DNA of 64,000 bases, taken from Macrostomum lignano (taxonomy: Eukaryota). The notes below the pieces were generated by a model. The model did no database searches. It saw nothing but the letters and a program-made list of their open reading frames with translations, and was not told the origin of the DNA. Numbering within the stretch: position 1 is the first letter of the stretch; every line of letters starts with the position of its first letter. Location of the stretch: contig NIVC01001135.1 in assembly GCA_002269645.1 (NCBI GenBank), positions 124,001 to 188,000 of the forward strand, given 5' to 3'. The translations under genes were made by a program, and so were the position numbers. Positions 1,193 to 26,086 of the stretch are shown one piece after another.

Positions 1193-1215
1193 AATGCACT
1201 ATGTCCCAGGCGTAC

Positions 1216-2121
1216 CTGAGGCATGATGCTGACTACGCTGACAAGCACGATGGTTGTGAGCAGTTTGGTAGTTCGAGTCATCTGCTTGTCATCGTTGGCG
1301 GCTGCGGCCTGATGCTTGCCAGCCGCCGCTGCCGCACCAGTCTTGGCTCCGGAGCGCAGAGTCCGCCGCCTCTCGTCGGTCCGTTTCAGTGATCGAATCA
1401 GAAAGATGCTGAGCACGGTGAGCAGCAGGACTGGCAGGAATTTTATGCCGATGCCCATTATCCAGAAGTTCAGACTGCTCAACACTGAGTCCTGCGAAAA
1501 TTTCAGCCCGAATGTGTAATAAGACCCGTTGATGTCCAGCTGGCAGGAGTGCTGGCGCAGAGACACGGTCTCCGCGTCCGTGGGCACCACGTGATGCCCG
1601 AGAGTGTTCGGCACCACCATGCCGACGGAGGCGGCGGCGGCCAGAGCGATGGCGAGTCGGGCGGTGCGGCCGGTGCACAGCTGCTTGCTCCGGACCGGCA
1701 GCTCGATGTACACCAAGCGGAAGGTGGCCAGGGCTACGGTGATCCAAGAGCTGCAGGCGTGAGCAAAGATTGTCACGCACAGCTGAGCCCATAGAAACAG
1801 TTGCCATGGCAACGGCTCCGGACAGTCCAGCTTCAGCCGGTTGTTCATGGTGAAGTAGAGGCAGAACGGCAGGTAGACGGTGGACATGAGGCAGTCAGAC
1901 AGGGCCAGAGCGGTCAGCAGGGTGTTGGTGGGGTTGCGCATCGAAGGCTGTGCGAACACAGCGATGTTCACCAGGTTGGTGGTGACGCCCAGGCTGCACA
2001 CGAAGGTGGCCAGGTACTTGTGCACGTCCGGGTACCTGCTGGACAGGGCGGCCAGCAGCGGCGGGACCGGGTCGCACTCGAGAGCGGTGCCGTTGTCCAG
2101 CGTTGAAGTCGAGTTGGCCAT
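1216..2121 (-). CDS. Class A peptide GPCR of the Srw / myosuppressin / sex-peptide receptor type; TM1-TM6 exon, last exon not found in window
   Basis: TM1 GVTTNLVNIAVF, TM2 NTLLTALALSD, TM3 SSWITVALATFRL, TM5 NFWIMGIGIKFLP, TM6 TKLLTTIVLVSVVSIMPQ. A donor CAG|GTACGC ends the exon at 1216. ATG at 2121 is directly preceded by an acceptor-like CAG. Confidence 0.88.
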
Positions 2122-2150
2122 CTGCTGTTGAGTTCACTGGAGGGCGGGAG

Positions 2151-3362
2151 AGTGAGCGGGGTGATTAGAGATGCCAGTGATGAGTGAGCGGGGTGATTAG
2201 AGATGCCAGTGATGAGTGAGCGGGGTGATTAGAGATGCCAGTGATGAGTGAGCGGGGTGATTAGAGATGCCAGTGATGAGTGAGCGGGGTGATTAGAGAT
2301 GCCAGTGATGAGTAAGCGGGGTTATTAGAGATGCCAGTGATGAGTGAGCGGGGTGATTAGAGATGCCAGTGATGAGTGAGCGGGGTGATTAGAGATGCCA
2401 GTGATGAGTGAGCGGGGTTATTAGAGATGCCAGTGATGAGTAAGCGGGGTGATTAGATATGCCAGTGATGAGTGAGCGGGGTGATTAGAGATGCCAGTGA
2501 TGAGTGAGCGGGGTGATTAGAGATGCCAGTGATGAGTAAGCGGGGTGATTAGAGATGCCAGTGATGAGTGAGCGGGGTGATTAGAGATGCCAGTGATGAG
2601 TGAGCGGGGTGATTAGAGATGCCAGTGATGAGTGAGCGGGGTGATTAGAGATGCCAGTGATGAGTGAGCGGGGTGATTAGAGATGCCAGTGCTGAGTAAG
2701 CGGGGTGATTAGAGATGCCAGTGATGAGTGAGCGGGTTGATTAGAGATGCCAGTGCTGAGTGAGCGGGGTGATTAGAGATGCCAGTGATGAGTGAGCGGG
2801 GTGATTAGAGATGCCAGTGATAAGTAAGCGGGGTGATTAGGGATGCCAGTGATGAGTGAGCGGGGTGATTAGAGATGCCAGTGCTGAGTAAGCGGGGTGA
2901 TTAGAGATGCCAGTGCTGAGTGAGCGGGGTGATTAGATATGCCAGTGATGAGTGAGCGGGGTGATTAGAGATGCCAGTGCTGAGTAAGCGGGGTGATTAG
3001 AGATGCCAGTGATGAGTGAGTGGGGTGATTAGAGATGCCAGTGATGAGTGAGCGGGGTGATTAGAGATGCCAGTGATGAGTGAGTGGGGTGATTAGTGAT
3101 GCCAGTGCTGAGTAAGCGGGGTGATTAGAGATGCCAGTGATGAGTGAGCGGGGTGATTAGAGATGCCAGTAATGAGTGAGCGGGGTGATTAGAGATGCCA
3201 GTGATGAGTAAGCGGGGTGATTAGATACATGTTTGCCAGTGATGAGTAAGCGGGGTGATTAGAGATGCCAGTGATGAGTAAGCGGGGTGATTAGAGATGC
3301 CAGTAATGAGTGAGCGGGGTGATTAGAGATGCCAGTGATGAGTGAGCGGGGTGATTAGAGAC
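2151..3362. repeat. 32-bp minisatellite
   Basis: Unit gtgattagagatgccagtgatgagtgagcggg, about 38 copies. Confidence 0.98.
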
Positions 3363-4329
3363 GGCAGTGGTGGGGTTAGAACTGACAAGATTAAAAATCG
3401 TGACTGACTGCGCTTCCAGACGGTAGTATGCAAAATTTCTCAAACTGCTCAGCTAAGAAACTTCTTCGAGGTCAAATCTGACAGAGAGGTCCATTCCAGA
3501 CAGACAGACCTAGTGGCGTGAATAACGTTGAAAATCCCTTAAGCCAGTCAGAGGTATTTGAGCGGCTGACAGGCCGGAAATCCCATCAAATCAGGCCGCC
3601 TCTCATCGAGATTATCCAGTAGCTTTTACTGGAGCCCGTTATCCCACTGCTTACTGCTGCTGCAATCTGTCTGACTGTCTATTCTATCTATCTATCTAAA
3701 ACAGAACTGAGACTCTCAAGAGCGGGTTGCAGCGGTGGAAAACAGTTGTAAATCATTGGCTTTCAATTTGAGAAAATCTGCTTTCGCCCTACCGAAGGCA
3801 GACAGACGGTTTGATTTAAATTGCGCTGACAGGGAAAGCAAAGCCAACGGAGATTTCAACACGAATTCCCCCCTAGCAACAGAATGAGACCCGAATGAAA
3901 TGGCGAGTGCTCTGCCTTAGTAATTCCCCAGGATCGGAAGGGTTTGCAGTGCTCCCCTCCCCCAAAAGTTACATCTGTTGCCGGAGAATTTCTGCTACTG
4001 AACAAAGGCTCAGATTGAAATGGGATTTGGACACTCGGAATACGGAAGAACAATTGCTGTGTCTGGGGAGGGGGGCTTAACATGTGAAGGCGAAAAGCTA
4101 TTCAAAGATTTGATTGCGATTCACACGCAGTGTTTGACCTGAGACTGACGACAATAGCCACTCCCCCCCAAGAGCTATGGAAACCGGAGCAGAGAGTTTT
4201 GAATTGCTTCTTTGATTTCTTGGGCGGTGACTCTTCTAGAGGACTTTGCTTTGCTAGCAGCAACTCGGGGTATTGGGACGAGTTTGACAAAGTTAAGCTG
4301 CGAATTTGGTCACAGTAATATGCCGTTTT

Positions 4330-7149: not shown

Positions 7150-8339
7150 GTGAGATGTGTGCTCACTCCAACAGGTGTGAGATGTGTGCTCACTCCAACA
7201 GGTGTGAGATGTTTGCTCACTCCAACAGGTGTGGTGAGATGTGTGCTCACTCCAACAGGTGTGAGATGTGTGCTCACTTCAACAGGTGTGAGATGTTTGC
7301 TCACTCTAACAGGTGCAATATATGTGTGCTCACTCCAACAGGTGCATGATATGTGTTCACTCTAACATCTGAGATGTGTTCTCACTCTAACAGGTGTGAT
7401 ATGCGTGCTCACTCTAACAGGTGCATGATATGTGTGTTCACTCCAACAGGTGCATGATATGTGTTCACTCCAACAGGTGCATGATATGCGTGTTCACTAC
7501 AACAGGTGCATAATATGTTTGTTCACTCCCACAGGTGCATGAGATGTGTGTTCACTCCAACAGGTGCATAATATGTGTGCTCACTCCAACAGGTGTGAGA
7601 TGTGTGCTCACTCCAACAGGTGTGAGATGTGTACTCACTCCAACAGGTGCATAATATGTGTGCTCACTCCAACAGGTGTGAGATGTGTGCTCACTCCAAC
7701 AGGTGTGGTGAGATGTGTGTTCACTCCAACAGGTGCATAATATGTGTGCTCACTCAAACAGGTGTGAGATGTGTGCTCACTCCAACAGGTGTGGTGATAT
7801 CTGTGCTCACTCCAACAGGTGTGGTGAGATGTGTGCTCACTCCAACAGGTGCATGATATGCGTGTTCACTACAACAGGTGCATAATATGTTTGTTCACTC
7901 CCACAGGTGCATGAGATGTGTGTTCACTCCAACAGGTGCATAATATGTGTGCTCACTCCAACAGGTGTGAGATGTGTGCTCACTCCAACAGGTGTGAGAT
8001 GTGTACTCACTCCAACAGGTGCATAATATGTGTGCTCACTCCAACAGGTGTGAGATGTGTGCTCACTCCAACAGGTGTGGTGAGATGTGTGTTCACTCCA
8101 ACAGGTGCATAATATGTGTGCTCACTCAAACAGGTGTGAGATGTGTGCTCACTCCAACAGGTGTGGTGATATCTGTGCTCACTCCAACAGGTGTGGTGAG
8201 ATGTGTGCTCACTCCAACAGGTGCATAATATGTGTGCTCACTCCAACAGGTGCATAATATGTGTGCTCACTCCAACAGGTGTGGTGATATCTGTGCTCAC
8301 TCCAACAGGTGTGGTGATATCTGTGCTCACTCCAACAAG
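7150..8339. repeat. 27-bp minisatellite with a 372-bp higher-order duplication
   Basis: Unit gagatgtgtgctcactccaacaggtgt. ORFs at 7546/7918 and 7629/8001 are identical, 372 bp apart. Confidence 0.97.
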
Positions 8340-8890
8340 TGAACCTGTTTACTAGAAGTAGATTTTTACAAATATTACAAGATGTGCTTATTAAAAAGTG
8401 CGGCCAGCAGTATAGATATGTTTCGCGGTTGATAAGGCATAATTATTAATGCTCGTAAATAACAAAATCTGTGCTGCTCTCCGAGTGCCCATTAAATCAA
8501 TATGGAGCAATTGGCGTCGAGACACGGGAGAGAAGACAGGGGAGGCTGGCTATAAAAGCCAAAGCTGAGTACAGCTCCATCCCTCGATCGTGCAGCAGGG
8601 AGAGGGGCGGAAGCAGGATGAAGGCCACTTAAATCTCTTCGAATTTGTACTTTTATTCGATGGCTACAGATATGGCTTCAGTTTTTATCGAAAGCTCCGT
8701 CTGATTAACTTATTTATATTATGGTCAGGCATCCCTCCTCTAATAGCATCTCAATGCAGGTAGGTGATTATTTAGATGGCATATAGTTCGTACTTATTAA
8801 TTTTCTAATTAAAGCATCTGCTCTCAATAAAATGTGCATGCTGGCTCAGTATTCCAATTTTATGGAATTGACAAAGACTACTTAACAACC

Positions 8891-9186: not shown

Positions 9187-9890
9187 AGCATAGACATTTA
9201 GCTGAAGCAATTGCGGCCTTTCATAGAATTTCTACCATTTGCGAGTGCAACATCCTGAATTGTTATAAAGTAGTTGGAAGCTATACGGAATTGTCGATAC
9301 GTGATGAAATGAGAGAGAAGCGTCTCAACAACTAATTAAATATGGTTTAGTTCGATCTGAAACTTGACCTGCTTTCTGCATGCCAAATGCATATTGCGTT
9401 GATGGAATTCGGGGGGGGGGGGGGGCTGTATCTATGTGCATGTACAAGCATGCAAACTCGCGAACATTATTCCATCCTAAATATGGAAATCCTAGACCCC
9501 GAAAAATTAATGATTTGTAATAAGAGAAATTGCACGAAGCATAATCCACTGTATGAAGCCAACGCTTCTAAATGTACATGTAATAGCGTGTGCTCTGTGT
9601 CAGATTGATGTCTGAAAGCAATTCAATTGGTCTGCCGTGATCCGTGAAGCAATCCGTGCTTTCTAGATATCGAAATTCCATATCGATGAAAATTAAAATC
9701 ATACGAAATTTAAGCAAATAGCAGAAAGATAATTCGAAACCAAAATGAAGAAACCGACTGTTGTCCCGTATTCTTCTTTAAAAAAATTGTGCATGTAATG
9801 CGCACACACGAATTTAAATTCAATACACATAGTAATCAACAAAGCGTCTACGCTACTAATACAATAAGAAACAACAAATAAAATACATTG

Positions 9891-10688: not shown

Positions 10689-13600
10689 AATTATGGTTGT
10701 TAATTGATTAATTATCATACTCTAGGCCATCAAAGGCTTTTTGGCAAGTCCCACTTTATATTTTTGTCCAGTATTTTTCATACTTAGCAGAATCATCGAA
10801 GTTTTCGTTCGCTATTTATTTTACTGACAATCTTTCGAGCTCTTACTTTTGCAATAAAATCAGTCGTTTTAGTTAGCTATTTATTAATTCTCTTTTTATG
10901 CGTTTGCACTAGCCCTTCCTACTTAAAATTTAAAGTAAAAAACAGGGTAATAACCAAAGTAAAAAAATATTTAAATTAGTTTTTGCAGCAATTTTTAATT
11001 AAAGTTCTTTATTATATAAAAAGTATATTAGGTTTTGTTTAAGTTTGTCATAGCTTATTTAAAATGTTTCTAAATTCGTTTGATCAATCCACGAAGATTT
11101 ATTTAACAACGAATATTTCGTCCACAAGAGTCAGCCACTCTGCTTCTCTTATCCCTCTCTCTAGACCCACTTACAAGAAAACGGCTTAAAGAAAACCGTG
11201 CTCCTAGTTTATTGATCAATATATTGTTGAAGATTATTGTTCTTCCTTTCTAAATCCCTTAAGTCTGATAACAGTACAATATTTTTAAATACTAGGCTCT
11301 ACTTCCTTTCTATGCAAAGCATAACTAGGTTACTAGGCCTATGACTATGTCGCAAGCCTGCCAACACGATTCGAGACAGGGAACCATATCTAATGTACTA
11401 AAAACGAAGTCTGGCTGTTAATGAGATCAATTAGGTAGTCCACAGCGCAGATTACATCTTAAGGAACAGTGCCAGTGGGGTAGGCCTAGGCCTAGGCTAG
11501 GCCTATCCTAATGCCTATTATAGAGGGCTTAAATTAATAGGCCTAGCCTAGCTGCTATTATGGCATAGGTCATAGTGGAGATCATGCTATGTGCCATACT
11601 GAATAGCAAAGTTGAAGATCATAATTTTATTTCAATTAATAATGAAAAAGTTTTTGTTTTACTTTACTTTTTTAGTCTATTTAGACAATACTAGTATTTT
11701 TTTGCACAAGCTATAAATGCCAATAATAATAGCATGCATATTTAAATTAAGTGCTAAAGCTTAAATATTCTAGTCAGGCCATTATATGTTTATAATTTTT
11801 TGTTAGGCCTAGTTATTATTAGGCCTTAGGCAGGGCCTAAGCTATATATTAGGCCCCATACAGCTATAGTCTAGATCATGCTGGGTGCAAACCTGAATAA
11901 AAATTGAATAATTACAAATATAGTGGCTTACATTAAAAAAATGGAGTGTATGCCCATTCTTACAACTATGCCAATATTGTGACAATAAAAGATCTTTTTT
12001 CAATTGTGTAATAAACCCTTTTTGACAGATAATTAAGTTAATTTTTTACTTTTTGGCAATATTATTTATAATTATAAAAAAAATTGATACTCACAAAGAT
12101 TTTATTATCTACTTTGTTACATATTAAAAAACTAGGGCCTAGAAAGCATGAAATTTACACTTAGAAATGAACTTTTTTCATCTTTTTTTCTACTTTACAA
12201 TAACTTTTTTGCATGATTTTTTAAAGTGCATGCCACATACATGCATAGGCCTAATATTTTTTTAGGTGTGATGCATGCCAATTGTGTATACCTACTTTTG
12301 GCATGCAAGGCTAATGCATACTTAGTTTATTTTAGAGACTCTAGTAAGATTTTTAAAATTGAAAATTGAATTATTGCACTTAATTATATATATCTTATTG
12401 AGAAGTTTAAATAAATATTTTGTTTATAAAAATAGATTTAAGAGTAAAAAAGTTGACTGTTTTGTTGTGATAAATGCTTTGACTTTTAGAGTGTATTTTT
12501 CCTATAAAGTACTGAAAGTAGGACTTGTAAATGTAGATACACAATAATTAAAAAATAGTGGTAAAATATAATGCTCTATTGTATTGTTATACCTTTTTAT
12601 CTTTGTAGCCAAAATTAGTCAAATCTCTGTATTCCAATTTTTTTGTAGCCAAATTATAAATTAACAAAAAACCCTAATTTTCAAAGGCAAAGACCAAAAT
12701 GTGAAGACAAAGCAAAAGCAATTAAACAAAAAGCAAAAACTCTTAGATTTAGGTATGTTTAGTTTGGTACTATAAATATAGATGCATTTTATATGAGATA
12801 GCCAATATTGTGTTTATTTTTTTAGCCAAAAATATAAAAATTTAAATAAAATAAACCTTTTTTACAAAAAAAATTCTGCTTGATTTATATTGTTACAAGA
12901 AATTATATATGATGCTCCAAATCTCTATAATCCATAACCATATCTTTGCCAATTGGCAAGATCTCCATAGTTGCAGTCTGTAATCAAATTTTGCTTGAAA
13001 AAGTGCCACCCTAAATTTCCCATAACCATAGCCATAATTATTGTAGAATGCTATAAAATGTAAGTCAAAAAATGTCTAAATGTTTTTAATAGAAAAATAT
13101 ATCAAAATTAAATTAAGAAAGAAATAATAAAAGTTATGAACAAAACCAAAAACACAATTTTTTGATAAAATAACTTTTAGTGAATATATATTATATTTTT
13201 TTGGCTACAATAATAATTGTCATATGGAGCACCTTTTATTCTTAATATTATACTATACTATACCTTTCAAAAATTTTGTGGTTTACTATTTTTTCTATAC
13301 ATCATATGATGCTTTGTTATCTGCTGTCATTTGTTTAAAAGTTTTGAATAATTCATAGGAATTCTAGCCTCCTACAATCCAGATTTTATCACCCCTCCCT
13401 AGTTCATTAGTGCATATATAAAATTTCTATGCCAACTTTTTATACATTCTTTCAGAAGCAAAAGGCTTATTAAATAAAGTATAAATTGTCATTTTATTTC
13501 TATAAATTTTTTTTCTTATTAAGTTGGACATTATTTTTATTTCAGCTTCCATTTTTTAAAGTTTTTTCAAACAATGTCCAGTTATACCATAAATGCAAAA

Positions 13601-14008
13601 ACTGGAAAATGGGCCATTTTTGCATACCAACTATATGCTAATATTGAACCCAAAATTATATACACTAAGATTCTTAGTTAAAGGCAAAAATATGCCAGTA
13701 TTGCTGTATTTTCCAACAAAGTTACTTTCCATTGTACTTAATGGTTCTATAGGACCATGATATGTACTATACCACCTTGACTATAATGTATTAATATTAA
13801 ACTATGCTGACAAATCTTTCCAATGCTATTGCCTCTTATTCTGTAGAAAGCTTTTGAATCTTGCATCTTTGGTTCCCATCTCACTGCCTCAACCCTGCAG
13901 GTTATTAAAAATCCAATTAGTTTGGGCATTTATTTTTTTTATTATTACCTAAACTAACTATAGTAATGTTTACAGATATATCTATCTTTAATATTCTATC
14001 TAAATATC

Positions 14009-14071
14009 ATGATGATAAAATTCTTAACCTGAACTACAAAAACAGTGATGGTTCAAGCTCAACAGGACTGA
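14009..14071 (+). ncRNA. C/D-box snoRNA (upstream copy), predicted 28S rRNA 2'-O-methylation guide
   Basis: C box ATGATGA 14009-15, D' CTGA 14029-32, C'-like GTGATGG 14045-51, D box CTGA 14068-71. Guide TCAAGCTCAACAGG (14053-66) is complementary to conserved 28S CCUGUUGAGCUUGA. Confidence 0.78.
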
Positions 14072-14179
14072 GAATCTATTCAATTTGTTAACTATCAATT
14101 CATTTTAAAACCAAACAAGTTGTTACTGCAAACGCCGCATCTTCTATTTAATAATTCATGCTGATCGAGTTAGCCAATC

Positions 14180-15195
14180 ATGTCTGGTCGTGCCGGTGGT
14201 AAAGCTGCCAGAAAATCTACTGGAAAGCAGCAGAAAAGCAAATCGTCTCGCGCCGGACTAGTTATGCCGGTTGCTAGGGTTCATCGCTACCTGAAACTCG
14301 GTCGCTACGGTAAGAAAGTTAGCGTCGGCGCCAGCGTCTACCTTGCCGCCGTCATGGAGTACCTGGTTGCGGAGGTCAACGAACTAAGCGGTAAGAGCTC
14401 TACTCAAGCCGTAGAATGTGTACACGGTAATATGATATAATAATTTTGCATATCATATTAGTTTAGAATGAATGATTGCTACTAAGGGGAATCAGCGTAG
14501 CTCTCTACTTTTATTAGAGTCAGGGGACCTGTGTGCACCCTGGCGCACTTTAAGCGACACTTAAGGTCACAACCGGCGAGATGCGTTGCTGCCCATTCCA
14601 CCGACTCCCCTGAGCAGGCACACAAGCGCGCGGATGCGTACGCACTTATATTTAGGCATGAACACTTCACTGTGCCCTGGTTGTGGGCCTCAAGGCCGCG
14701 TTAATTGCGCAAGCAGAGCCAAGCCGAGATTCCAATTTAGCTCCAAAATTATTGTGATTGCACTTGGAATCCAGCCGCTTAGCAGAGTAGCTTCATTACC
14801 CCAGCCCAGTGAACTATTACTAGTAACTCTATGATGATAAAATTCTAAATCACGGACCTAAGCTCATGACGGTTCAAGCTCAACAGGACTGAAAAAAATG
14901 CATTCTTTTTCTCCCATGCGCCAATGGTGCTACTTATCAGTAGCAAGTCAAGCTTAGATTTGTTCTCCCCCCGCTCCGCACAAAACGCCAACATGCAGGC
15001 AACGCTGCCAGGGCTAACAAGAGGAAGACCGTCACGCCCAGGCACATCATGCTAGGCGTGCGCAACGACGCCGAACTGAACGAACTGTTGAAGCACGTGC
15101 ACATCAGCTTTGGCGGCGTGCTGCCCTCTATCCATCCTGTGTTGCTGAAGAAGAAGGGCAGCTTGCCGGCTGTGCCGCAGGGCAAGAGTGGCTAA
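14180..15195 (+). CDS. H2A: Divergent intron-containing histone H2A variant, 135 aa (exons 14180-14390, 14999-15195)
   Basis: [20 protein letters not shown]...[19 protein letters not shown]|[30 protein letters not shown]...[15 protein letters not shown]. Phase-1 GTAAG..CAG intron restores the frame. No histone stem-loop seen after the stop. Confidence 0.95.
14486..14802 (+). ncRNA. Candidate structured RNA of unknown class in the H2A intron
   Basis: GC-richer island whose ends can pair, with several internal helices including a possible pseudoknot. No diagnostic family motif. Confidence 0.3.
14831..14892 (+). ncRNA. C/D-box snoRNA (intronic copy) with the same 28S guide
   Basis: C box ATGATGA 14831-37, C'-like ATGACGG 14866-72, guide TCAAGCTCAACAGG 14874-87, D box CTGA 14889-92. 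Lies 106 nt upstream of the 3' splice site. Confidence 0.83.
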
Positions 15196-17487
15196 GGCCC
15201 GAATCCCCGGGTTTTCTTTGACTAAATTAACTCATTAATTACAGCGTGGCAGCAGGGCAAAATTATTGCTAAATAGCTACATTTTTCATACTAAAAGTTT
15301 GGCCGTTTTTTAATCAAGTAATTTTTTATTATTTAGCCAATCTGTCAAATTGAACTGTTTTGTATAAATTTGTTTTTCTCTTTTCAACTGTCAAGTTATG
15401 CTGATATACCTTAAGCCATAGTTGATTAGTACAAATGTAACTGTAAAAGTTGATTGCTGATTAGCTCTCTTAAAATTATGCGATTTTGTCATCGCGGCAC
15501 TTATTTCTGTTCTGTTCCCCGTTTTTAGCGCAGTCGGTCATCTCTGTTGTAAAAATTCATTCAATACGCATCATCTGTTGCTGTCAGTCTCCATTTCTCT
15601 ACATCCTGCACTGCCCTTGTCTAACTATCTAGCCCGCATCATACTACTAGCAATGAGTAATGCTAGAGCGTTGAAAAGTAAAAAAATACACTACTATATC
15701 AAATATAATTTCTCAACTTAGCGGTGTTAAATATACACGTTTATTAAATGATGTTGTGTTATTGCTGTTTTCTTCATTGTCTCTCTTGAAGTGCGCAGGT
15801 GTGTTGTGGAAACCTGAAATGATGGGGAATTGAAAAGTTTGTTATTGGTATTGCATTACGACTGGGAATCTCCTATATTATGTATTGTTGACTGGCCGAT
15901 TTAATCCGATAGCGTTTGAGCGGGGAAGGTGCAATACGATTTTAGGCGCTTTTTTATTGCGCAATTTGCAACAATTGAGATTAAATATTGCTATTGCAGT
16001 CTTCGCATGTCACCTGCTCGCCCAGCGCTACCGGATCTGTTTTGGTCTGTCAGGCTGGCTATAGTGGAGTAACTCTAATAAGCCGCTGTAATAGTCAAGC
16101 TGAAGCTCCGAGCTCTTTGAGTTTAGCTCTGGGCTCAGCTTGGTCCTACTTATAGGGTTCCTCACGGCGGGCGGCTGTGTGCGTGGCCAGTGCTGTGCAG
16201 TTTGGGGGGGTTGCGACCGTCGCCTGACCCTCACCGCCTCATTGTTGGGTCTTGGAGTTCTTCGGGGGGAGAGAGGGAGGGTTATGACAGCGGGCTGGGG
16301 CTGGGTCAGAACAATGCAGTGCTCGCTATTATGGCTGCAGGCGATCAGGACTGCATTTTTCTTCTCCGAGTGAGGCAAGCAGACGCGCCTGGCTGAGCAC
16401 GTCTGAGTGGTGTGGAGGGGCTGCTTTTGCTGTTGCAGCTGCGTGCCGCCTTAGCGGACCCGCCCAGCCCTGCACCCTCAGGCTAAACACGGGCAGCTCA
16501 CACACTGTTAGCTGCTTTGTGCTTCTCTCCGTGTGCTCAGGCATTCTCCAAGAGCTCAAGATTTTTAAGAATGAGATGGAAGGCATATGCACACCGGCGC
16601 CGGAGCACCTGGTTGAAGAAGATTTGACTTGAATAGCCACCGCGTGCAGGCATTGCTTTATAATAATAGTTCAGCAGCCTTTATGGGCATTATTTGTATT
16701 AGTTTATTATATAGGTGAGTCGAATATTTCAGTCACATCAACAGGGGAGGGGGGTTTTAAAGTAGCATGTGGTTGCAGTGAGCTTCATTTTTGGCCTATT
16801 GTGTTGATTATAAGCTGGCAATTGTGTGGCATATAGTGAGCATATATTAATACTATTCATCCCTCACTCTGCGAATGCAAGCGCGTGCTGCAATTTTCGA
16901 ATATCAAACTAAAAACTTTGTTGAGCTGCATTCATCTACAAGCAGCTCTCTTACCTCTATTTATTATTCAGCTGTATGGTTGAAAACAGTCCAAACTGCA
17001 GATGCAATACATATGTATATGCCATTCGCCACTCTCTGTCGCTCTGTTGGGTGCATTTGCAGTTTTATTCATGCCAATCCTGGCAATTGCAAGTGTTTTT
17101 GCTTTCAAAAAAAGTAAACAGCGGGACGATACCTCGTCACCCATTAGTGCAATACTTTTGGGCTACTATGCATTATCTATAGGCCTTTGAAAGTTGTGTC
17201 GACAACGGCAAATATGCGTCTTAATTGTACATAACATTTTATCTTATCACTTTTCAGTTTCACTCTTTTCCGCACACGCGTATAAACATGCACAAATCAG
17301 TCGCTCCTTAACACAGTCTCGATGGTCTCGCATTATTCCTAAATGTAAGACAAACATTTTTAAATTCGTGTATAATTATTGCAATCTCATTTTAATCGTC
17401 ATAAAAGATAGAGCATTGTATCATTTGCTTATACTTGGTGAGTTTACTGTCACCTTAGTGCATTGTTTGCTATCTTCTGTCAAGCAG

Positions 17488-18166
17488 ATTCAAGCACTGA
17501 GTGAGAGGATTGAGGCAGATTCATGCACTGAGTGAGAGGATTGAGGCAGATTCAAGCACTGAGGGAGAGGATTGAGGCAGATTCAAGCACTGAGTGAGAG
17601 GATTGAGGCAGATTCAAGCACTGAGTGAGAGGATTGAGGCAGATTCAAGCACTGAGTGAGAGGATTGAGGCAGATTCAAGCACTGAGTGAGAGGATTGAG
17701 GCAGATTCAAGCACTGAGTGAGAGGATTGAGGCAGATTCAAGCACTGAGTGAGAGGATTGAGGCAGATTCAAGCACTGAGGGAGCGGAGAGAGGCAGATT
17801 CAAGCACTGAGGGAGCGGAGAGAGGCAGATTCAAGCACTGAGGGAGCGGAGAGAGGCAGATTCAAGCACTGAGGGAGCGGAGAGAGGCAGATTCAAGCAC
17901 TGAGGGCGGAGAGAGGCAGATTCAAGCACTGAGGGCGGAGAGAGGCAGATTCAAGCACTGAGGGCGGAGAGAGGCAGATTCAAGCACTGAGGGCGGAGAG
18001 AGGCAGATTCAAGCACTGAGGGCGGAGAGAGGCAGATTCAAGCACTGAGGGCGGAGAGAGGCAGATTCAAGCACTGAGGGCGGAGAGAGGCAGATTCAAG
18101 CACTGAGGGCGGAGAGAGGCAGATTCAAGCACTGAGGGCGGAGAGAGGCAGATTCAAGCACTGAGG
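17488..18166. repeat. 31/29-bp minisatellite ending ~95 bp before the mannosidase ATG
   Basis: Unit aggcagattcaagcactgagtgagaggattg grading into aggcagattcaagcactgagggcggagag. Confidence 0.97.
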
Positions 18167-18261
18167 GAGAAAAAAAGAAAAAAAGAGATGTCTCTTTTGA
18201 TAATTTTTATATTTCACGACTTTGGACATTATTTCTCTATTCCCCGAAGAAGTGGCATCTA

Positions 18262-21200
18262 ATGAAGATGCACACTGCACTTCTGCCGTCGCTGCTGCTG
18301 CTGCTGCTGACAGCAGCTGAAGTGCCCGGAGCTGCAGCGACAAGCGCCAGCTGCGGCTACAACGGCTGTCCCGCTGCTGTGCCTCGCCGAGTGAACCTGC
18401 ACATTGTGCCGCACACTCACGACGATGTTGGCTGGCTGCGGACGGTGGACCAGTACTATTACTACAGAGTGCAGTTCATTCTGGACAATGTCATTCGCGA
18501 GCTGAGCCTCGATTCCAAGAGGAAATTCACTTATGTCGAGATGGCATTTTTTTATCGATGGTGGCGGGAGCAGAGTAATTCCACTAGGGACCAGGTGCGA
18601 ATTCACATTGACAGCAATGACAAGTTAAAGGTGCTAGATCTCGGGGTCAAGCTCAGGACCTCAGAAAAAACTGCCCCATGGATTATCGATTAGATGATGC
18701 AGGTTTTATTTCTGTTGGGTCTGTGACACATGAATGCCACGAATTGACTGCAGAACATAACCCTAATCCCTAACCCAACCCTAATCCCTAACCCAACCCT
18801 AATCTCTAACCCAACCCTGATCCCTAACCCAACCCTAATCCCTAACCCAACCCTGATCCCTAGCCCAACCCTAATCCCTAACCCAACCCTGATCCCTAAC
18901 CCAACCCTAATCCCTAACCCAACCCTGATCCCTAACCCAACCCTAATCCCTAACCCAACCCTGATCCCTAACCCAACCCTGATCCCTAACCCAACCCTAA
19001 TCCCTAACCCAACCCTAATCCCTAACCCAACCCTAATCCCTAACCCAACCCTAATCCCTAACCCAACCCTAATCCCTAACCCAACCCTAATCCCTTACCC
19101 ATATCTCCCAACCATAAACCCTAACCTTAACCTAACCTTAATCCTATCCTTAAACCCTTACTAACCCTAGTCCCTAAACCTTAAACCTTGCCTAATACAT
19201 GTACCTAACCCTAACCTAAACCCTATTAGATCAATCTGTCAAACTGTCGGCAGTCAATGAGTTGCCAATTAGTCAATTAGTTGCCAATTAGTCAATTAGT
19301 TGCCAATTAGTCAATTAGTTGCCAATTGCTCAATTAGTTGCCAATTGCTCAATTAGTTGCCAATTGCTCAATTAGTTGCCAATTTGTCATTTAGTTGCTC
19401 CCATTTCGATTGTTACTAAACTCACAAGAAAAAAATCAGCTGAAAGCCATCGTTCCTACTTAAAGTAGCAAAGTGAAGCGCAAAAAATGTTTTAAATTCG
19501 TCCACCTCGGTCAGGTCCGCCAACTGGTTGCCAACGGGCAGCTGCACTTCGCCCAGGGCGGCTGGTGCATGAACGACGAAGCCACCACGCACTACGCGGA
19601 CATTGTGGACCAGCAGACCCTGGGGATGCGCTTCTTGAATGACACGTTCGGCGACTGCGCCAGGCCGAGAGTCGGCTGGCAAATTGATCCGTTCGGCCAC
19701 AGCAAAGAGTTCGCCGCCCTGCTAGCTCAGATGGGGCTGGACGCCTTCTACTTTGCTCGGATTCACTTCCTGGATGAAGTGCAGAGAGTGATAACGAGGA
19801 GAATGCAGTTTGTGAGTCATTGGACTGGATGACTCGTCCGTGTGCAGCAGGGGTGAGAGTGTGCAGCAGGGGAGAGAGTGTGCAACAGTGGTAGGGAGAG
19901 TGTGCAGCAGTGGTAGGGAGAGAGTAAACAGGCGATGGGCTGGTGTGTAACACAGGTGATGGGCTGGTGTGTAACACAGGTGATGGGCTGGTGTGTAACA
20001 CAGGTGATGGGCTGGTGTGTAACACAGGTGATGGGCTGGTGTGTAACACAGGTGATGGGCTGGTGTGTAACACAGGTGATGGGCTGGTGTGTAACACAGG
20101 TGATGGGCTGGTGTGTAACACAGGTGATGGGCTGGTGTGTAACACAGGTGATGGGCTGGTGTGTAACACAGGTGATGGGCTGGTGTGTAACGCAGGTGAT
20201 GGGCTGGTGTGTAACACAGGTGATGGGCTGGTGTGTAACACAGGTGTTGGGCTGGTGTGTAACACAGGTGATGGGCTGGTGTGTAACACAGGTGATGGGC
20301 TGGTGTGTAACACAGGTGATGGGCTGGTGTGTAACACAGGTGATGGGCTGGTGTGTAACACAGGTGATGGGCTGGTTTGTAGCACAGGTGATGGGCTGGT
20401 TTGTAGCACAGGTGATGGGCTGGTTTGTAGCACAGGTGATGGGCTGGTGTGTAACACAGGTGATGGGCTGGTGTGTAACACAGGTGATGGGCTGGTGTGT
20501 AACACAGGTGATGGGCTGGTGTGTAACACAGGTGATGGGCTGGTGCGTAACACAGGTGATGGGCTGGTGTGTAACACAGGTGATGGGCTGGTGTGTAACA
20601 CAGGTGATGGGCTGGTGTGTAACACAGGTGATGGGCTGGTGTGTAACACAGGTGATGGGCTGGTGTGTAACACAGGTGATGGGCTGGTGTGTATATCATC
20701 GCCGCGCCTCTCGCGAAGGTTTGGCACGCCAGTCGGGACCTCGGCAGCCCTTCGGCTGACATCTTTGCCGGCGACTTCGTGTCGGGCTACTGCTACCCGC
20801 CCGGCACCAACTACGAAGGCGGCGACCAGCCGGTGCAGGACGACCCTCAACTGCACGACTTCAACGTGGCCGAGGCCGTCAGGAAGTTCATCGTGCAGGT
20901 GGACCTCCTCCGGCTGGCTCATCGCACCAGCCACTTGCTGCTCACCATGGGCTGCGACTTTGCCTACGAGAATGCCAGGAAGAATTTCAAGATAATTGAC
21001 AAACTGATTGCGGCTGTGAACGCCAACACCAGCCAGCACAACCTGACCGCCTACTACAGCTCGCCCGACTGCTACACCAAGGCTGTGAACGATGAGGGCC
21101 TCGCCTACGCCGTGAAGACTGGCGACTTTTTTCCCTACGCGTCCGGGCCGAACTCCTACTGGACCGGATTCTACAGCAGCCGGCCGGCTTTGAAGCGGCT

Positions 21201-24200
21201 GGTCAGGTGGGCGTCCGGCCACCTGCAGGCGGTCAAGCAGCTGGCGGCGGTTGGACCGGCCGTGCTCGGCGACGCCTCGGAGAGGCTGGACCGCCTGCGG
21301 CAGGCGCAGGGGGTGGCGCAGCATCACGATGCAGTGGCTGGTGAGAAACGAGGAGTCTGTGAGGTGTTAGAGGAGTCTGTGAGGTGTTAGAAGAGGCTGT
21401 GAGGTGTTAGAAGAGGCTGTGAGGTGTTAGAAGAGGCTGTGAGGTATTAGAGGAGGCTGTGAGGTGTTAGAGGAGGCTGTGAGGTGTTAGAAGAGGCTGT
21501 GAGGTATTAGAGGAGGCTGTGAGGTGTTAGAGGAGGCTGTGAGGTGTAAGAGGAGGCTTTGGGGTGTTAGAGGAGGCTGTGAGGTGTTAGAGGAGGCTGT
21601 GAGGTGTTAGAAGAGGCTGTGAGGTGTTAGAAGAGGCTGTGAGGTGTTAGAGGAGGCTGTGAGGTGTTAGAGGAGGCTGTGAGGTGTTAGAGGAGGCTGT
21701 GAGGTGTTAGAAGAGGCTGTGAGGTATTAGAGGAGGCTGTGAGGTGTTAGAGGAGGCTGTGAGGTGTAAGAGGAGGCTTTGGGGTGTTAGAGGAGGCTGT
21801 GAGGTGTTAGAGGAGGCTGTGAGGTGTTAGAGGAGGCTGTGAGGTGTTAGAGGAGGCTGTGAGGTGTTAGAGAAGGCTGTGAGGTGTTAGAGGAGGCTGT
21901 GAGGTGTTAGAGGAGGCTGTGAGGTATTAGAGAAGGCTGTGAGGTGTTAGAAGAGGCTGTGAGGTATTAGAGGAGGCTGTGAGGTGTTAGGGGAGGCTGT
22001 GAGGTGTAAGAGGAGGCTTTGGGGTGTTAGAGAAGGCTGTGAGGTGTTAGAGGAGGCTGTGAGGTGTTAGAGGAGGCTGTGAGGTGTTAGAGGAGGCTGT
22101 GAGGTGTTAGAGGAGGCTGTGAGGTGTTAGAGGAGGCTGTGAGGTGTTAGAAGAGGCTGTCAGGTATTAGAGGAGGCTGTGAGGTGTTAGAGGAGGCTGT
22201 GAGGTGTAAGAGGAGGCTTTGGGGTGTTAGAGGAGGCTGTGAGGTGTTAGAGGAGGCTGTGAGGTGTTAGAGGAGGCTGTGAGGTGTTAGAGGAGGCTGT
22301 GAGGTGTTAGAGAAGGCTGTGAGGTGTTAGAGGAGGCTGTGAGGTGTTAGAGGAGGCTGTGAGGTATTAGAGAAGGCTGTGAGGTGTTAGAAGAGGCTGT
22401 GAGGTATTAGAGGAGGCTGTGAGGTGTTAGGGGAGGCTGTGAGGTGTAAGAGGAGGCTTTGGGGTGTTAGAGAAGGCTGTGAGGTGTTAGAGGAGGCTGT
22501 GAGGTGTTAGAGGAGGCTGTGAGGTGTTAGAGGAGGCTGTGAGGTGTTAGAGGAGGCTGTGAGGTGTTAGAGGAGGCTGTGAGGTGTTAGAAGAGGCTGT
22601 CAGGTATTAGAGGAGGCTGTGAGGTGTTAGAGGAGGCTGTGAGGTGTAAGAGGAGGCTTTGGGGTGTTAGAGGAGGCTGTGAAGTGTTAGAGGAGGCTGT
22701 GAGGTGTTAGAGGAGGCTGTGAGGTGTTAGAGGAGGCTGTGAGGTGTTAGAGAAGGCTGTGAGGTGTTAGAGGAGGCTGTGAGGTGTTAGAGGAGGCTGT
22801 GAGGTGTTAGAGAAGGCTGTGAGTTTTTAGAAGAGGCTGTGAGGTATTAGAGGAGGCTGTGAGGTGTTAGGGGAGGCTGTGAGGTGTAAGAGGAGGCTTT
22901 GGGGTGTTAGAGAAGGCTGTGAGGTGTTAGAGGAGGCTGTGAGGTGTTAGAGGAGGCTGTGAGGTGTTAGAGGAGGCTGTGAGGTGTTAGAGGAGGCTGT
23001 GAGGTGTTAGAGGAGGCTGTGAGGTGTTAGAGGAGGCTGTGAGGTGTTAGAGGAGGCTGTGAGGTGTTAGAGGAGGCTGTAAGGTGTTAAAGGATGCTGT
23101 GAGGTGTTAGAGGAGGCTGTGAGGTGTTAGAGGAGGCTGTAAGGTGTTAGAGGAGGTGTAAGGCGTATGAGGAGATGTGGGGTGCGAACCAGGCAGTGGA
23201 CGCTGACGGAGGCTGCACGCTGCCTTCAAGATCGGCCACAAGCGAGTCTCCAACGCGGTACTCTATCGCCGCGCCGGTCTGGTCCGTCCAAGCGACCTGT
23301 TGCGCCGTCAGCGACTCCTTCAGTTTGCAGCCGTACCTGGCCCTGTGACGCTGACTGACTTCTTAAGACCCTGACAGCCTACGAGCGTATTTTTGTGCCA
23401 ATGTCAAGCAGAGGTTCCAATGTCAAGCAGAGGTTCCAATGTCAAGCAGAGGTTCCAATGTCAAGCAGAGGTTCCAATGTCAAGCAGAGGTGCCAATGTC
23501 AAGCAAAGGTTCCAATGTCAAGCAGAGGTCCCAATGTCAAGCAGAGGTTCCAATGTCAAGCAGAGGTTCCAATATCAAGCAGAGGTTCCAATGTCAAGCA
23601 GAGGTTCCAATGTCAAGCAGAGGCTCCAATGTCAAGCAGAGGCTCCAATGTAAAGCAGAGGTTCCAATGTCAAGCAGAGGTTCCAATGTCAAGCAGAGGT
23701 TCCAATGTCAAGCAGAGGTTCCAATGTCAAGCAGAGGTTCCAATGTCAAGCAGAGGTTCCAATGTCAAGCAGAGGTTCCAATATCAAGCAGAGGTTCCAA
23801 TGTCAAGCAGAGGTTCCAATGTCAAGCAGAGGCTCCAATGTCAAGCAGAGGTTCCAATGTCAAGCAGAGGTTCCAATGTCAAGCAGAGGTTCCAATGTCA
23901 AACAGAGGTGCCAATGTCAATGAGGGATGTCAATGTCACGGAGAATGTAGGGTCCTAGTGAAATCAAGAAGGTTCTAGAAAATAGAATTCTCCAGTGTGC
24001 TTTCCCCAATCAGAAGCATACCAATGCCTTCGCCCCCTGCAGGCACCGAGAAGCAGGCGGTCGCCTTTGACTACGCCCTGCGCCTGTCGGACGGCATCGC
24101 GTCAAGCGACCCGCTCTGGCAGGCCCGCCTGGCCCAGCTGCAGTTCGGCAACCTCAGCCAGCGGGACGCCCTGCGCGCCTGCGAGCTGCTGAACGCGTCC

Positions 24201-26086
24201 TACTGTCCGGTGTCCGAGCTGGCTACCGGACGCTTCTTCGTCACATTCTACAATCCGGCCAGCAGATTGAGCTGGCACTCGGCCAGGCTGCCCGTGACCG
24301 GACGGTACTACCGCGTACTGGATGAAGCCGGAGCCCCTGTCACCTCGCAGACAATCCCGGTGAACAATGGCACTCTCCGGGTGCCCGAGAGGAACCTATC
24401 GATAGCTGTCAACGAGCTGGCGTTCTTCGTAGCCTCGATTCCTCCGCTAGGCTACGCTGTGTACTCTGTGGAGCCGTGCAACTCCACGGACCCGGGCGCG
24501 TCCGTGTTCACGCCGATTCTGCCGACGACCAACGCGGGTCGCTCGGCGTCGGAAATTAGCGTCGGTCTGGCGTTCTACATTGGAATGCGCGGCAACTCTA
24601 GTGGAGAGCAGTTCAGACCGTCTGGGGCCTACGTGTTCAGGTGTGTAAGCGGAAGTTGTCGTACATGTATGTTGTTGTTTCCTTCCCCTTGAAGTGCCTG
24701 AGGTGGGTGAGTTTGGTAGCGCCTTCCTGAAGTGACTGATCTGGGGCTTCCTGAAGTGACTGATGTGGGACTTCCTGAGGTGACTGATGTGGGACTTCCT
24801 GAAGTGACTGATCTGGGGCTTCCTGAAGTGACTGATGTGGGACTTCCTGAAGTGACTGATGTGGGACTTCCTGAAGTGACTGATCTGGGGCTTCCTGAAG
24901 TGACTGATGTGGGACTTCCTGAAGTGACTGATGTGGGACTTCCTGAAGTGACTGATCTGGGGCTTCCTGAAGTGACTGAGGTGGGTCTTAAGATGCGTGA
25001 CTCTAAATCTTAGCTCGTAACTGTACTTGAGCTGTGAAACAATTTCCCAGGCCAACAACGGACCGACCCCAGACGCTATCCGCTCGCATTCAAGCCCAAG
25101 TGATCGGTCCCGTAGTCAACGAAACCCATTTTAACTACAACGACTGGGCGTACCTGGTTACTAGGCAGTATCCGGGTGCCAGTTCAAACTATCTAGAAGC
25201 CGAGTCGACTGTCGGTCCGCTACCGCTAGACGACGGTGTCGGTCGGGAAGTTGTCGCCGTCTATTCAGCCGACGGTCTGTCGGCGTCATCCGGCGAATTC
25301 CTGGTGGACTCGAACGGCCGCCAGCTGATGCGGGCTCGGCGAGACCCCAGCCGGCCAGAGGCCGCCCAGTTCCGGCCTGCTAACGCCATCGTCAGCGTTG
25401 CCGATGCCGCTCGTCAGCTGACGGTGCTGACCGACCGAGCCGCGGCCGCATCCTCGCGACCAGCCGAAGGCCAGCTCAGCGTGATGTTGCACCGAGTGAC
25501 GCTCGATGACGACGGATTTGGCGTTGGCGAAGCCCTGCGTGAGCGCGGCTCCGACGGCCGGGGCCTGGTGGTGAAGACCAGCCACTGGTACTTCCTGGCT
25601 GAGCCGGCGGCCTCTGCCGATCGCTACCGCTTGCTGGCAAGTCAGCGGCACCGCTCTCCCCTGGTGACTTTCTCGCTGCTGCAGCCGCGTTCCGCTTGGT
25701 GCCAATGGAGCGCCTTGACCGCTCCGCTGCCGGACAGCGTCCAGATTCTCACTCTGGAGCCCTGGCGTCAAAGTCCCGACCGACTGCTACTCCGGCTGGA
25801 GAACATCTTTCAAGCAAACGAATCGTCAGCTCATTCTGGGCCGGTCACAGTCGATTTGGGAGCCACATTTTCCGCGTTCGCCATCCTGGATGCCGTTGAG
25901 TTGAATTTGTCCGCCAACCAGCGCCTGGCGGATCAGACCCGGCTGAAGTGGCGCTCCATGCAGACAGAGGCAGTTGATCAGCAACCTCGCAGGGGACCGC
26001 TCACCAAGTCGCTCGAGATGACGCTGAGGCCTATGGAAATCAGGACGTTTGAAATTCGAGTAGCTTACAAAGGCGGAACTCTGTAG
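18262..26086 (+). CDS. MAN2B1: Lysosomal alpha-mannosidase (GH38), 961 aa; exons 18262-18594, 19515-19811, 20719-21340, 24043-24640, 25051-26086
   Basis: Signal peptide, [26 protein letters not shown] nucleophile motif, [25 protein letters not shown]-terminal LRPMEIRTF. Intron phases 0,0,1,2 are consistent; total 2886 nt. Confidence 0.96.
18766..19225. repeat. Telomere-like 18-bp minisatellite in MAN2B1 intron 1
   Basis: Unit ccctaacccaaccctaat, built from CCCTAA variants. Confidence 0.9.
19255..19400. repeat. 19-bp minisatellite in MAN2B1 intron 1
   Basis: Unit caattagttgccaattagt. Confidence 0.9.
19840..20692. repeat. 24-bp minisatellite in MAN2B1 intron 2
   Basis: Unit ggtgatgggctggtgtgtaacaca. 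Confidence 0.98.
21350..23160. repeat. 20-bp minisatellite in MAN2B1 intron 3
   Basis: Unit gaggtgttagaggaggctgt. A variant unit recurs with ~440-bp higher-order spacing. Confidence 0.98.
23180..23335 (+). mobile_element. Short degenerate RTE fragment, same family as 9891-10370
   Basis: cagtggacgctgacggag...gctgccttcaagatcggc...cgccgcgccggtctggtccgtccaagcgacctgttgcgccg aligns to the WTLTE...AAFKIG...RPS-LLRR segment with a deletion. Confidence 0.75.
23395..23935. repeat. 19-bp minisatellite in MAN2B1 intron 3
   Basis: Unit ccaatgtcaagcagaggtt. Confidence 0.97.
24722..24985. repeat. 24-bp minisatellite in MAN2B1 intron 4
   Basis: Unit cttcctgaagtgactgatgtggga. Confidence 0.97.

What the first reader, a model, noticed from the sequence alone, without database searches (positions are those of the whole stretch)
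14009..14892. Paralogous C/D snoRNA pair at a histone H2A locus guiding a site beside the peptidyl-transferase centre
Two ~62-nt units (14009-14071, 14831-14892) share the C box, the D box and the 14-nt TCAAGCTCAACAGG, while the middle has diverged. The guide is complementary to the conserved eukaryotic LSU segment (AGAAGAC)CCUGUUGAGCUUGA (recalled). The D+5 rule predicts 2'-O-methylation of the G in CCUG*UUG, aligning to about E. coli 23S G2067. I do not recall this as a standard human or yeast site, so it may be lineage-restricted. A histone gene acting as snoRNA host is unusual, and the upstream copy implies an unannotated 5' intron or host transcript.
Basis: partly seen in the sequence, partly recalled or inferred. 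Interest (0 to 1): 0.7.

Follow-up and report, generated by a model that had tools for sequence, protein, structure and literature searches.

The report
Flatworm snoRNA pair at histone gene
Two small guide-RNA genes flank the first exon of a histone H2A gene in the flatworm Macrostomum lignano; they look real and should direct a sugar methylation on ribosomal RNA next to the catalytic centre, at a site already known in plants, so this is a sound but ordinary new annotation.

Summary
Window 14009-14071 and 14831-14892 (+ strand) each run from a perfect C box (AUGAUGA) to a perfect D box (CUGA). They share 16 nt at the 5' end and 25 nt at the 3' end, including TCAAGCTCAACAGG, and the middle has diverged.

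The window is Macrostomum lignano. Unit 2 lies in the single intron of a flatworm-type H2A variant gene. Unit 1 lies 108 nt upstream of its ATG.

The guide gives 14 uninterrupted pairs with the conserved 28S segment CCUGUUGAGCUUGA. The D+5 rule selects the G of CCUG (yeast G2409, E. coli G2067 by my alignment).

The site is not peculiar to this lineage. It is mapped as Gm2410 in Arabidopsis, where the guide is SnoR29, and is listed as Gm2412 in tomato and tobacco. It is blank in human and yeast, and no matching site appears in the fly or Dictyostelium tables.

A metagenome scan found many C/D RNAs with the same guide, some in introns of an eIF4G2-like gene whose closest named relative is from Daphnia.

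Verdict: very probably genuine C/D snoRNAs, a new member of a known kind. Expression, methylation and how the upstream copy is transcribed were not tested.

The parts
14009..14071 (+). Unit 1, a box C/D snoRNA candidate of 63 nt. It lies 108 nt upstream of the H2A start codon in AT-rich sequence with no annotated gene.
   Evidence: It is kept in L001 and L003, with one A-to-G change at 14026 in L003.
14009..14015 (+). Unit 1 C box, AUGAUGA.
   Evidence: The TGATGA core is invariant in the family alignment.
14016..14028 (+). Unit 1 spacer upstream of D' (UAAAAUUCUUAAC), a possible second guide. No target was identified.
   Evidence: I compared it only with recalled rRNA and snRNA sequence and found no convincing match.
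14029..14032 (+). Unit 1 D' box, CUGA.
14046..14051 (+). Unit 1 C' box, UGAUGG.
   Evidence: The same UGAUGG(U) sits before the guide in most environmental relatives.
14053..14066 (+). Unit 1 D guide, UCAAGCUCAACAGG. It forms 14 uninterrupted pairs with 28S CCUGUUGAGCUUGA. The C at 14063, fifth nucleotide upstream of the D box, pairs with the target G.
   Evidence: The 28S sequence comes from published primers.
14068..14071 (+). Unit 1 D box, CUGA.
14831..14892 (+). Unit 2, a box C/D snoRNA candidate of 62 nt. It lies inside the H2A intron in the sense orientation, 106 nt upstream of the 3' splice site. The C box is at 14831-14837, a degenerate C' (UGACGG) at 14867-14872, the guide at 14874-14887 and the D box at 14889-14892. 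No recognisable D' box is present. An A7 run follows the D box.
   Evidence: There is no substitution in L001 or L003; only the length of the A-run varies.
14180..14390 (+). Exon 1 of the host gene, a flatworm-type histone H2A variant.
   Evidence: The spliced product of 135 aa is 100% identical to BOX15_Mlig005952g1 of Macrostomum lignano. Pfam matches Histone and Histone_H2A_C. The gene is called at L002 3001-4016, which is window 14180-15195.
14391..14998 (+). The single intron of the H2A gene (GT...AG, 608 nt). It carries unit 2.
   Evidence: Reading frame and splice sites read directly from the sequence. Apart from unit 2 it has no repeat in the window and no notable fold.
14999..15195 (+). 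Exon 2 of the H2A variant gene, including the stop codon.

Best explanation
Both units are box C/D small nucleolar RNA genes of Macrostomum lignano, paralogues of one another.

Proposed mechanism, inferred from what is established for C/D RNPs:
- Unit 2 is transcribed as part of the H2A variant pre-mRNA. After splicing, exonucleases trim the intron down to the C/D core particle (Snu13, Nop56, Nop58, fibrillarin), which releases the snoRNA.
- Unit 1 is made either from an undetected 5' intron or trans-splicing outron of the same gene, or from a promoter of its own.
- In the nucleolus the 14-nt element just upstream of the D box pairs with 28S rRNA CCUGUUGAGCUUGA, in helix 74 a few nucleotides from the central loop of the peptidyl-transferase centre.
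- Fibrillarin then methylates the 2'-OH of the G paired to the fifth guide nucleotide upstream of the D box. By my alignment this is yeast G2409, Arabidopsis G2410 and E. coli G2067.

Shown here: the anatomy, the complementarity, the genomic position, the conservation pattern between the paralogues, and the existence of relatives with the same guide.

Inferred: expression, RNP assembly and the methylation itself.
For: 1. Box anatomy. Both units have a perfect C box and D box 62-63 nt apart. Unit 1 also has CUGA as D' and UGAUGG as C'.

2. Pattern of divergence. The boxes and the D guide are identical between the two units, while the interior and flanks have diverged. That is what selection on a guide RNA would produce.

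3. Target. There are 14 uninterrupted Watson-Crick pairs with a 28S segment that serves as a conserved primer site in animals. The guide sits one nucleotide from the D box, the canonical geometry.

4. Relatives. A scan for guide plus D box returned 52 stretches. In 17 units on 15 loci an exact RTGATGA lies 39-42 nt upstream of the guide, where I estimate about 0.07 by chance. Most of these also have 3-5 bp terminal stems.

5. Independent confirmation. Locus L061 was fetched through the host protein, not through the guide pattern. It again carries two such units in an eIF4G2-like gene, between the called MIF4G and MA3 products.

6. The target nucleotide is a real Nm site elsewhere. Arabidopsis Gm2410 falls in a SnoR29 T-DNA mutant. 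The review's Table 2 lists Gm2412 in tomato and tobacco.

7. Position. Unit 2 lies in the sense strand of an intron, 106 nt from the acceptor.

8. Paralogous loci. Both units are retained in all three M. lignano copies of the locus, with 1 substitution in 125 nt against about 4.2 expected from the non-coding background (P about 0.08, weak).
Against: - No terminal stem worth the name: about 2 bp for unit 1 and about 1 bp for unit 2. Folding energies are no better than shuffled sequence. The environmental relatives have clear stems.
- Unit 2 has a degenerate C' box, no D' box, and an A-run after the D box that could mark a retrocopy.
- Unit 1 has no demonstrable host intron, and the only AG sites between it and the ATG are poor acceptors.
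- No Rfam family reaches its gathering score.
- The orthologous H2A loci examined in Schistosoma, Echinococcus, Calicophoron and one unnamed flatworm lack the guide.
- The 28S of M. lignano itself could not be examined.
- There are no expression or methylation data.
Confidence: 0.8

Rival explanations
1. Only one unit is functional. The other is a decaying duplicate or retrocopy that is not expressed, or does not assemble into a stable RNP.
For: - Unit 2 has lost D', has a weakened C' (UGACGG), has essentially no terminal stem and is followed by A7.
- Unit 1 sits outside any annotated transcript.
- The paralogous loci are too similar (about 3% substitutions) to show constraint clearly.
Against: - The C box, D box and full guide are intact in both units in all three loci.
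- No target-site duplication flanks unit 2 (read).
- Unit 2 has the canonical intronic, sense-strand position.
- The relatives in eIF4G2-like genes also occur as two copies per gene.
Confidence: 0.25
2. The RNAs are real C/D snoRNAs, but their main role is not methylation of this G. They might act as a folding chaperone on helix 74, methylate the neighbouring U as well, or use the 5' element conserved in both units (UAAAAUUCU) on another RNA.
For: - In Arabidopsis the same guide element methylates both G2410 and U2411.
- The first 9 nt after the C box are identical in both units although D' is lost in unit 2.
Against: - In Arabidopsis, tandem targeting was seen only for D' guides. Here the guide uses a perfect D box, where the D+5 rule is normally strict.
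- No target for the 5' element was found.
Confidence: 0.1
3. A chance resemblance, or a stray antisense fragment of rDNA, and not an RNA gene at all.
For: No significant secondary structure and no Rfam match.
Against: - An exact 14-mer occurs twice where 0.0005 is expected.
- In both copies the rDNA match stops at the same bases and abuts a D box.
- Perfect C boxes lie at snoRNA distance.
- The same arrangement recurs in unrelated eukaryotic contigs.
Confidence: 0.02

Closest known systems
Arabidopsis SnoR29 (AtsnoR29); the Rfam plant family snoZ107_R87 carries the same antisense string
   Same: Same target nucleotide. Arabidopsis 25S Gm2410 is the G of CCUG, placed by its offset of 12 from Um2422, which is yeast Um2421. 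The snoZ107_R87 consensus contains UUCAAGCUCAACAG.
   Different: - In the plant RNA the element lies upstream of a degenerate D' box, not a perfect D box.
- It also methylates the next U (U2411), and the same RNA guides G2392.
- The Rfam score is only 15 bits against a gathering score of 50.
- The shared target could be common descent or convergence.
Unnamed C/D snoRNAs in introns of an eIF4G2/DAP5-like gene of environmental invertebrates (L050, L041, L060, L061), and a second group next to RPL12 (L014 group)
   Same: Identical D guide and register. They have C and D boxes, usually a UGAUGG(U) C' box just before the guide, a length of about 65-70 nt, and two copies per host gene.
   Different: - The host genes are typical translation genes (MA3/MIF4G protein, uL11), not a histone gene.
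- They have clear 3-5 bp terminal stems.
- The 5' spacer differs and, in the L050 group, is self-complementary to the guide.
- The organisms are unknown. The best named host-protein match is Daphnia galeata at 65% identity.
Yeast snR66 and snR78 (human U52/SNORD52)
   Same: They guide methylation on the same rRNA strand 8 and 12 nt downstream (yeast Um2417 and Um2421, human Um3925). Their guides therefore overlap the same conserved segment.
   Different: Different target nucleotides and different guides. Yeast and human have no Nm at the G targeted here.
SNORD36 and Dictyostelium DdR1 (best Rfam hits for unit 1)
   Same: Generic C/D layout and an A/U-rich 5' spacer.
   Different: Scores of 21 and 18 bits against gathering scores of 30 and 70. 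The guides do not match, and Dictyostelium has no Nm at this G.

Membership tests
Box C/D snoRNA (fibrillarin guide RNA) | C box RUGAUGA near the 5' end and D box CUGA near the 3' end, about 60-100 nt apart | tested here: met
   AUGAUGA and CUGA are present in both units, which are 63 and 62 nt long.
Box C/D snoRNA (fibrillarin guide RNA) | Antisense element of at least 10 nt, complementary to rRNA or snRNA, ending 1-2 nt upstream of the D or D' box | tested here: met
   14 uninterrupted pairs with CCUGUUGAGCUUGA of 28S, and one unpaired nucleotide before the D box. The 28S sequence comes from published animal primers, not from M. lignano itself.
Box C/D snoRNA (fibrillarin guide RNA) | Terminal stem that brings C and D together into a kink-turn | tested here: inconclusive
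   Only about 2 bp (unit 1) and about 1 bp (unit 2) are possible, and the fold z-scores are -0.4 and +0.6. Short stems do occur in intronic animal snoRNAs (my own knowledge).
Box C/D snoRNA (fibrillarin guide RNA) | Internal C' and D' boxes | tested here: met
   Unit 1 has CUGA and UGAUGG. Unit 2 has only a degenerate UGACGG and no D' box. This feature is often degenerate in genuine snoRNAs.
Box C/D snoRNA (fibrillarin guide RNA) | A stable small RNA bound by fibrillarin, Nop56, Nop58 and Snu13 | not testable with these tools
   No expression or immunoprecipitation data can be reached from here.
Box C/D snoRNA (fibrillarin guide RNA) | 2'-O-methylation at the D+5 nucleotide of the target | not testable with these tools
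   Not known for M. lignano. The equivalent G is methylated in Arabidopsis, tomato and tobacco.
Plant snoZ107_R87 / SnoR29 family | Match to the family covariance model at or above its gathering score | tested here: not met
   15.2 bits against 50, and only over the guide string. There are no hits at gathering thresholds.
Plant snoZ107_R87 / SnoR29 family | The guide for this site lies upstream of a degenerate D' box | tested here: not met
   Here the guide lies upstream of the terminal D box. For the plant arrangement.
Intron-encoded snoRNA | Sense orientation inside an intron of a Pol II host gene | tested here: met
   This holds for unit 2 only, which lies in intron 14391-14998 and ends 106 nt before the acceptor. 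Unit 1 has no demonstrated intron.

The most novel reading that the evidence does not exclude
Some animals (a flatworm, and invertebrates whose host protein is closest to Daphnia's) methylate the helix 74 G next to the peptidyl-transferase centre and the macrolide pocket. That site was so far documented only in green plants and algae, and it is absent from the human, yeast, fly and Dictyostelium tables consulted.

In the flatworm the guide has moved from a translation-factor host to a flatworm-specific histone H2A variant gene. One copy may be released from a 5' intron or a trans-splicing outron.
Probability: 0.4. Interest if true: 0.4.

Novelty: new member of a known kind. Interest (0 to 1): 0.25.

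Why it matters
It adds two well-defined C/D snoRNA genes to a regeneration model animal for which my literature search turned up no snoRNA catalogue.

It predicts one rRNA methylation that model animals lack. It also shows that the same guide exists in other invertebrates, so the site looks patchily distributed across eukaryotes and not plant-specific.

The histone-variant host and the copy upstream of the first exon are small curiosities about how snoRNAs change hosts. Nothing here changes how C/D snoRNAs are thought to work.

Tried and rejected
- **Rfam.** At gathering thresholds there were no hits on the window, on the orthologous flatworm loci, or on the units in the 18 environmental loci scanned. 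The only hit was an unrelated snR61-like RNA elsewhere on L040. At permissive E-values only generic or guide-only hits appeared.
- **Weak SNORD107-like hit at 13529-13595 (-).** It has no C box and was rejected.
- **Orthologous H2A loci.** Schistosoma, Echinococcus, Calicophoron and an unnamed flatworm (L004-L008) were searched with up to 3 mismatches and showed no such guide. Hosting by this H2A gene is therefore not conserved across the flatworm loci examined.
- **Further H2A look-ups.** One gave nothing on record. The other gave only contigs of about 1 kb with the ORF close to one end, which I took to be transcripts.
- **Rest of the intron.** I looked for a second RNA in the GC-rich stretch 14460-14830. 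The fold z-score was +0.56 and there were no repeats.
- **Retrocopy signature of unit 2.** An A-run is present but there is no target-site duplication.
- **Target of the D' spacer.** I compared it only with recalled rRNA and snRNA sequence and found nothing convincing. The resemblance to the SNORD36 guide breaks down to runs of at most 5 pairs.
- **Literature.** One search on 'R87/Z107' returned only irrelevant papers. Supplements of the fly and zebrafish Nm papers are not held. One supplement search timed out.
- **Daphnia host protein (P0121).** Its locus is not on record.
- **Covariance model of the family.** I did not build one. The members were collected by the guide, so a match to the M. 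lignano units would be circular.

Full report
**What is in the sequence**

On the + strand, 14009-14071 reads:

AUGAUGA-UAAAAUUCUUAAC-CUGA-ACUACAAAAACAG-UGAUGG-U-UCAAGCUCAACAGG-A-CUGA

14831-14892 reads:

AUGAUGA-UAAAAUUCUAAAUCACGGACCUAAGCUCA-UGACGG-U-UCAAGCUCAACAGG-A-CUGA

A scan for RTGATGA followed 40-75 nt later by CTGA finds these two units at 14009 (63 nt) and 14831 (62 nt). Only six other such pairs occur in the whole window, and four of those lie inside one tandem array.

The 14-mer occurs exactly twice, against 0.0005 expected. The two units share 16 nt at the 5' end and 25 nt at the 3' end. The interior and the flanks have diverged. BLAST of the intron against the window recovers only the other unit, at 79% identity over 68 nt and E about 1e-8.

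**Where it is**

The spliced ORF consists of exon 1 (14180-14390), a GT...AG intron (14391-14998) and exon 2 (14999-15195). It encodes a 135-aa histone H2A that is 100% identical to BOX15_Mlig005952g1 of the free-living flatworm Macrostomum lignano. Window 11180-18195 is identical to part of contig NIVC01001135.1.

The protein belongs to an H2A variant conserved across flatworms. It is 73-82% identical to proteins of Schistosoma, Paragonimus, Echinococcus and others, and about 60-67% identical to other H2As.

Unit 2 lies in the intron in the sense orientation, and its D box ends 106 nt before the acceptor. Unit 1 ends 108 nt upstream of the ATG, at the edge of a 2-kb stretch of 26% G+C with no annotated gene.

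**Target**

The element upstream of the D box forms 14 uninterrupted Watson-Crick pairs with CCUGUUGAGCUUGA. Papers that use this stretch as a conserved 28S primer site give the sense sequence GGGAAAGAAGACCCTGTTGAGCTTGACTC, both for animals in general and for Daphnia.

One unpaired A separates the guide from CUGA. The fifth nucleotide upstream of the D box is therefore the C that pairs with the G of CCUG.

By my own alignment of recalled sequences this G is yeast 25S G2409 and E. coli G2067, in helix 74, a few nucleotides from the central loop of domain V. The yeast numbering is corroborated by published tables. Yeast Um2421, human Um3925, Arabidopsis Um2422 and Ostreococcus Um2264 are given as equivalent, and the G lies 12 nt upstream of that U.

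**Is the site known?**

Yes, in plants.
- RiboMeth-seq maps Arabidopsis 25S Gm2410 and Um2411. They are assigned to the D' guide of SnoR29, and methylation drops in a SnoR29.2 T-DNA mutant (PMC8053127).
- A review table lists the same site as Gm2412 in tomato and tobacco, where Nm sites were located by cryo-EM, and as Gm2252 in Ostreococcus tauri. The text says the Ostreococcus sites were predicted from annotated C/D snoRNAs.
- The human and yeast columns of that table are blank for this site (PMC11542601).

The Drosophila map has no Nm between Gm2774 and Gm3152, where by my estimate the site would fall near 2942. Dictyostelium lists Um2683 and Um2687 as the equivalents of yeast Um2417 and Um2421, but nothing at 2675.

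The Rfam plant family snoZ107_R87 contains the same antisense string. It matches unit 2 only over that string, at 15 bits against a gathering score of 50.

**Relatives**

One scan of metagenome contigs for TCAAGCTCAACAGGNCTGA returned 52 stretches. About half look like chance matches in G+C-rich contigs with no C box nearby.

In 17 units on 15 loci an exact RTGATGA lies 39-42 nt upstream of the guide. I estimate about 0.07 such cases by chance. Most of these units also have 3-5 bp terminal stems and a UGAUGG C' box just before the guide, as in unit 1. Four further loci (L016, L019, L023, L033) have near-consensus C boxes. Three of them, with G+C of 64-72%, also show terminal stems.

None of these units reaches a gathering score in Rfam.

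Several units lie in a gene with eIF4G2/DAP5-like MA3 exons (L050, L041, L060). Another group lies next to an RPL12 exon. The closest named relative of the L050 host fragment is a Daphnia galeata protein at 65% identity.

The strongest single result is L061. It was fetched through a homologue of that host protein, so independently of the guide pattern. It again contains two such units between the called MIF4G and MA3 products.

A C/D snoRNA with this guide in this register is therefore widespread, and invertebrates closest to Daphnia probably carry it.

**Evidence on function in M. lignano itself**

Both units are present in the two other copies of the locus (L001, L003). Those copies are only about 3% diverged in non-coding sequence. 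The units carry 1 substitution in 125 nt where 4.2 are expected, P about 0.08, which is weak support.

The units have almost no terminal stem and no significant fold. Lack of a significant fold is usual for C/D RNAs, but the missing stem contrasts with the relatives.

Unit 2 has lost D', has a weakened C', and is followed by A7 (A6 in L003). No target-site duplication is visible, so a retrocopy origin is possible but unsupported.

The orthologous H2A loci examined (Schistosoma, Echinococcus, Calicophoron, and an unnamed species whose H2A is 81% identical) do not contain the guide. The histone host is therefore a local feature of the Macrostomum lineage and not an old association.

In that unnamed species (locus L007) the coding sequence has no intron, and a good acceptor (uugauuugcag) sits 4 nt before the ATG. 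This shows that a 5' intron or a trans-splice site is plausible for this gene family. In M. lignano, however, the only AG sites between unit 1 and the ATG are poor ones. How unit 1 is expressed stays open.

**Conclusion**

The most likely reading (0.8) is a pair of genuine box C/D snoRNAs. Their D guide directs fibrillarin to the helix 74 G next to the peptidyl-transferase centre.

The mechanism is the standard one. The target is already known from plants, is blank in the human and yeast tables, and has no counterpart in the fly and Dictyostelium tables. The histone H2A variant host is unusual but recent.

The main uncertainty is whether both copies are active (rival at 0.25) and how the upstream one is transcribed. 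This is a new member of a known kind and of modest interest.

Noticed in passing
window 1-64000, e.g. 2150-3369, 7151-8341, 21350-23174, 31445-32630, 46148-47367, 49891-51058: The window is crowded with minisatellite arrays: over 25 arrays, with periods of 14-43 nt and lengths of 0.3-1.8 kb. They coincide with the strong local GC skews and with several long 'ORFs' that have no Pfam match (19492-21327, 31060-32736, 46156-47385).
   Followed up: partly
window 18759-19101: A 343-bp interstitial array with the 18-nt unit AACCCTAATCCCTAACCC, which looks like telomere-type (TTAGGG)n repeats with a variant. It lies inside the alpha-mannosidase gene region.
   Followed up: no
window 1168-2121 (-); about 17263-26086 (+); 57310-58728 (+): Neighbouring genes: a rhodopsin-family, Srw-like GPCR; a GH38 alpha-mannosidase, whose gene call starts at window 17263 and whose C-terminal GH38 domains map to 25034-26086; and an arginyl-tRNA-protein transferase (ATE1). 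The ATE1 'ORF' reads through a 24-nt tandem array at 57549-58066 that I take to be intronic.
   Followed up: partly
window 14180-15195; L004-L008: The host is an H2A variant conserved across Platyhelminthes (73-82% identity) with no SQ motif at the C-terminus. Gene structure varies: one 608-nt intron here, an intronless coding sequence in L007, and gene spans of 2.9 kb in Schistosoma and 9.6 kb in Calicophoron.
   Followed up: partly
window 9301-9360 (+): Another C-box-to-D-box pair (GUGAUGA ... CUGA, 60 nt) with no obvious terminal stem. Its target was not examined.
   Followed up: no
window 13529-13595 (-): A weak SNORD107-like Rfam hit (27 bits, E 0.75). It has AUGGUA where the C box should be and is judged spurious.
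   Followed up: yes
L050 104-173 and 1115-1184; L041; L011; L013: In this eIF4G2-hosted group the spacer after the C box (AAACUUGAUACC in L050 and L041, AAACUUGAUGCC in L011) shares CUUGAU, which can pair with AUCAAG at the start of the snoRNA's own guide (7 nt, CUUGAUA with UAUCAAG, in L050 and L041). That spacer may therefore form an internal hairpin and not serve as a second guide.
   Followed up: no
L040 1237-1312 (-): A snR61/Z1/Z11-type snoRNA above its gathering score (47.6 bits) lies on the same strand, about 0.9 kb downstream of a unit with the TCAAGCTCAACAGG guide. This suggests a snoRNA cluster in that unknown eukaryote.
   Followed up: no
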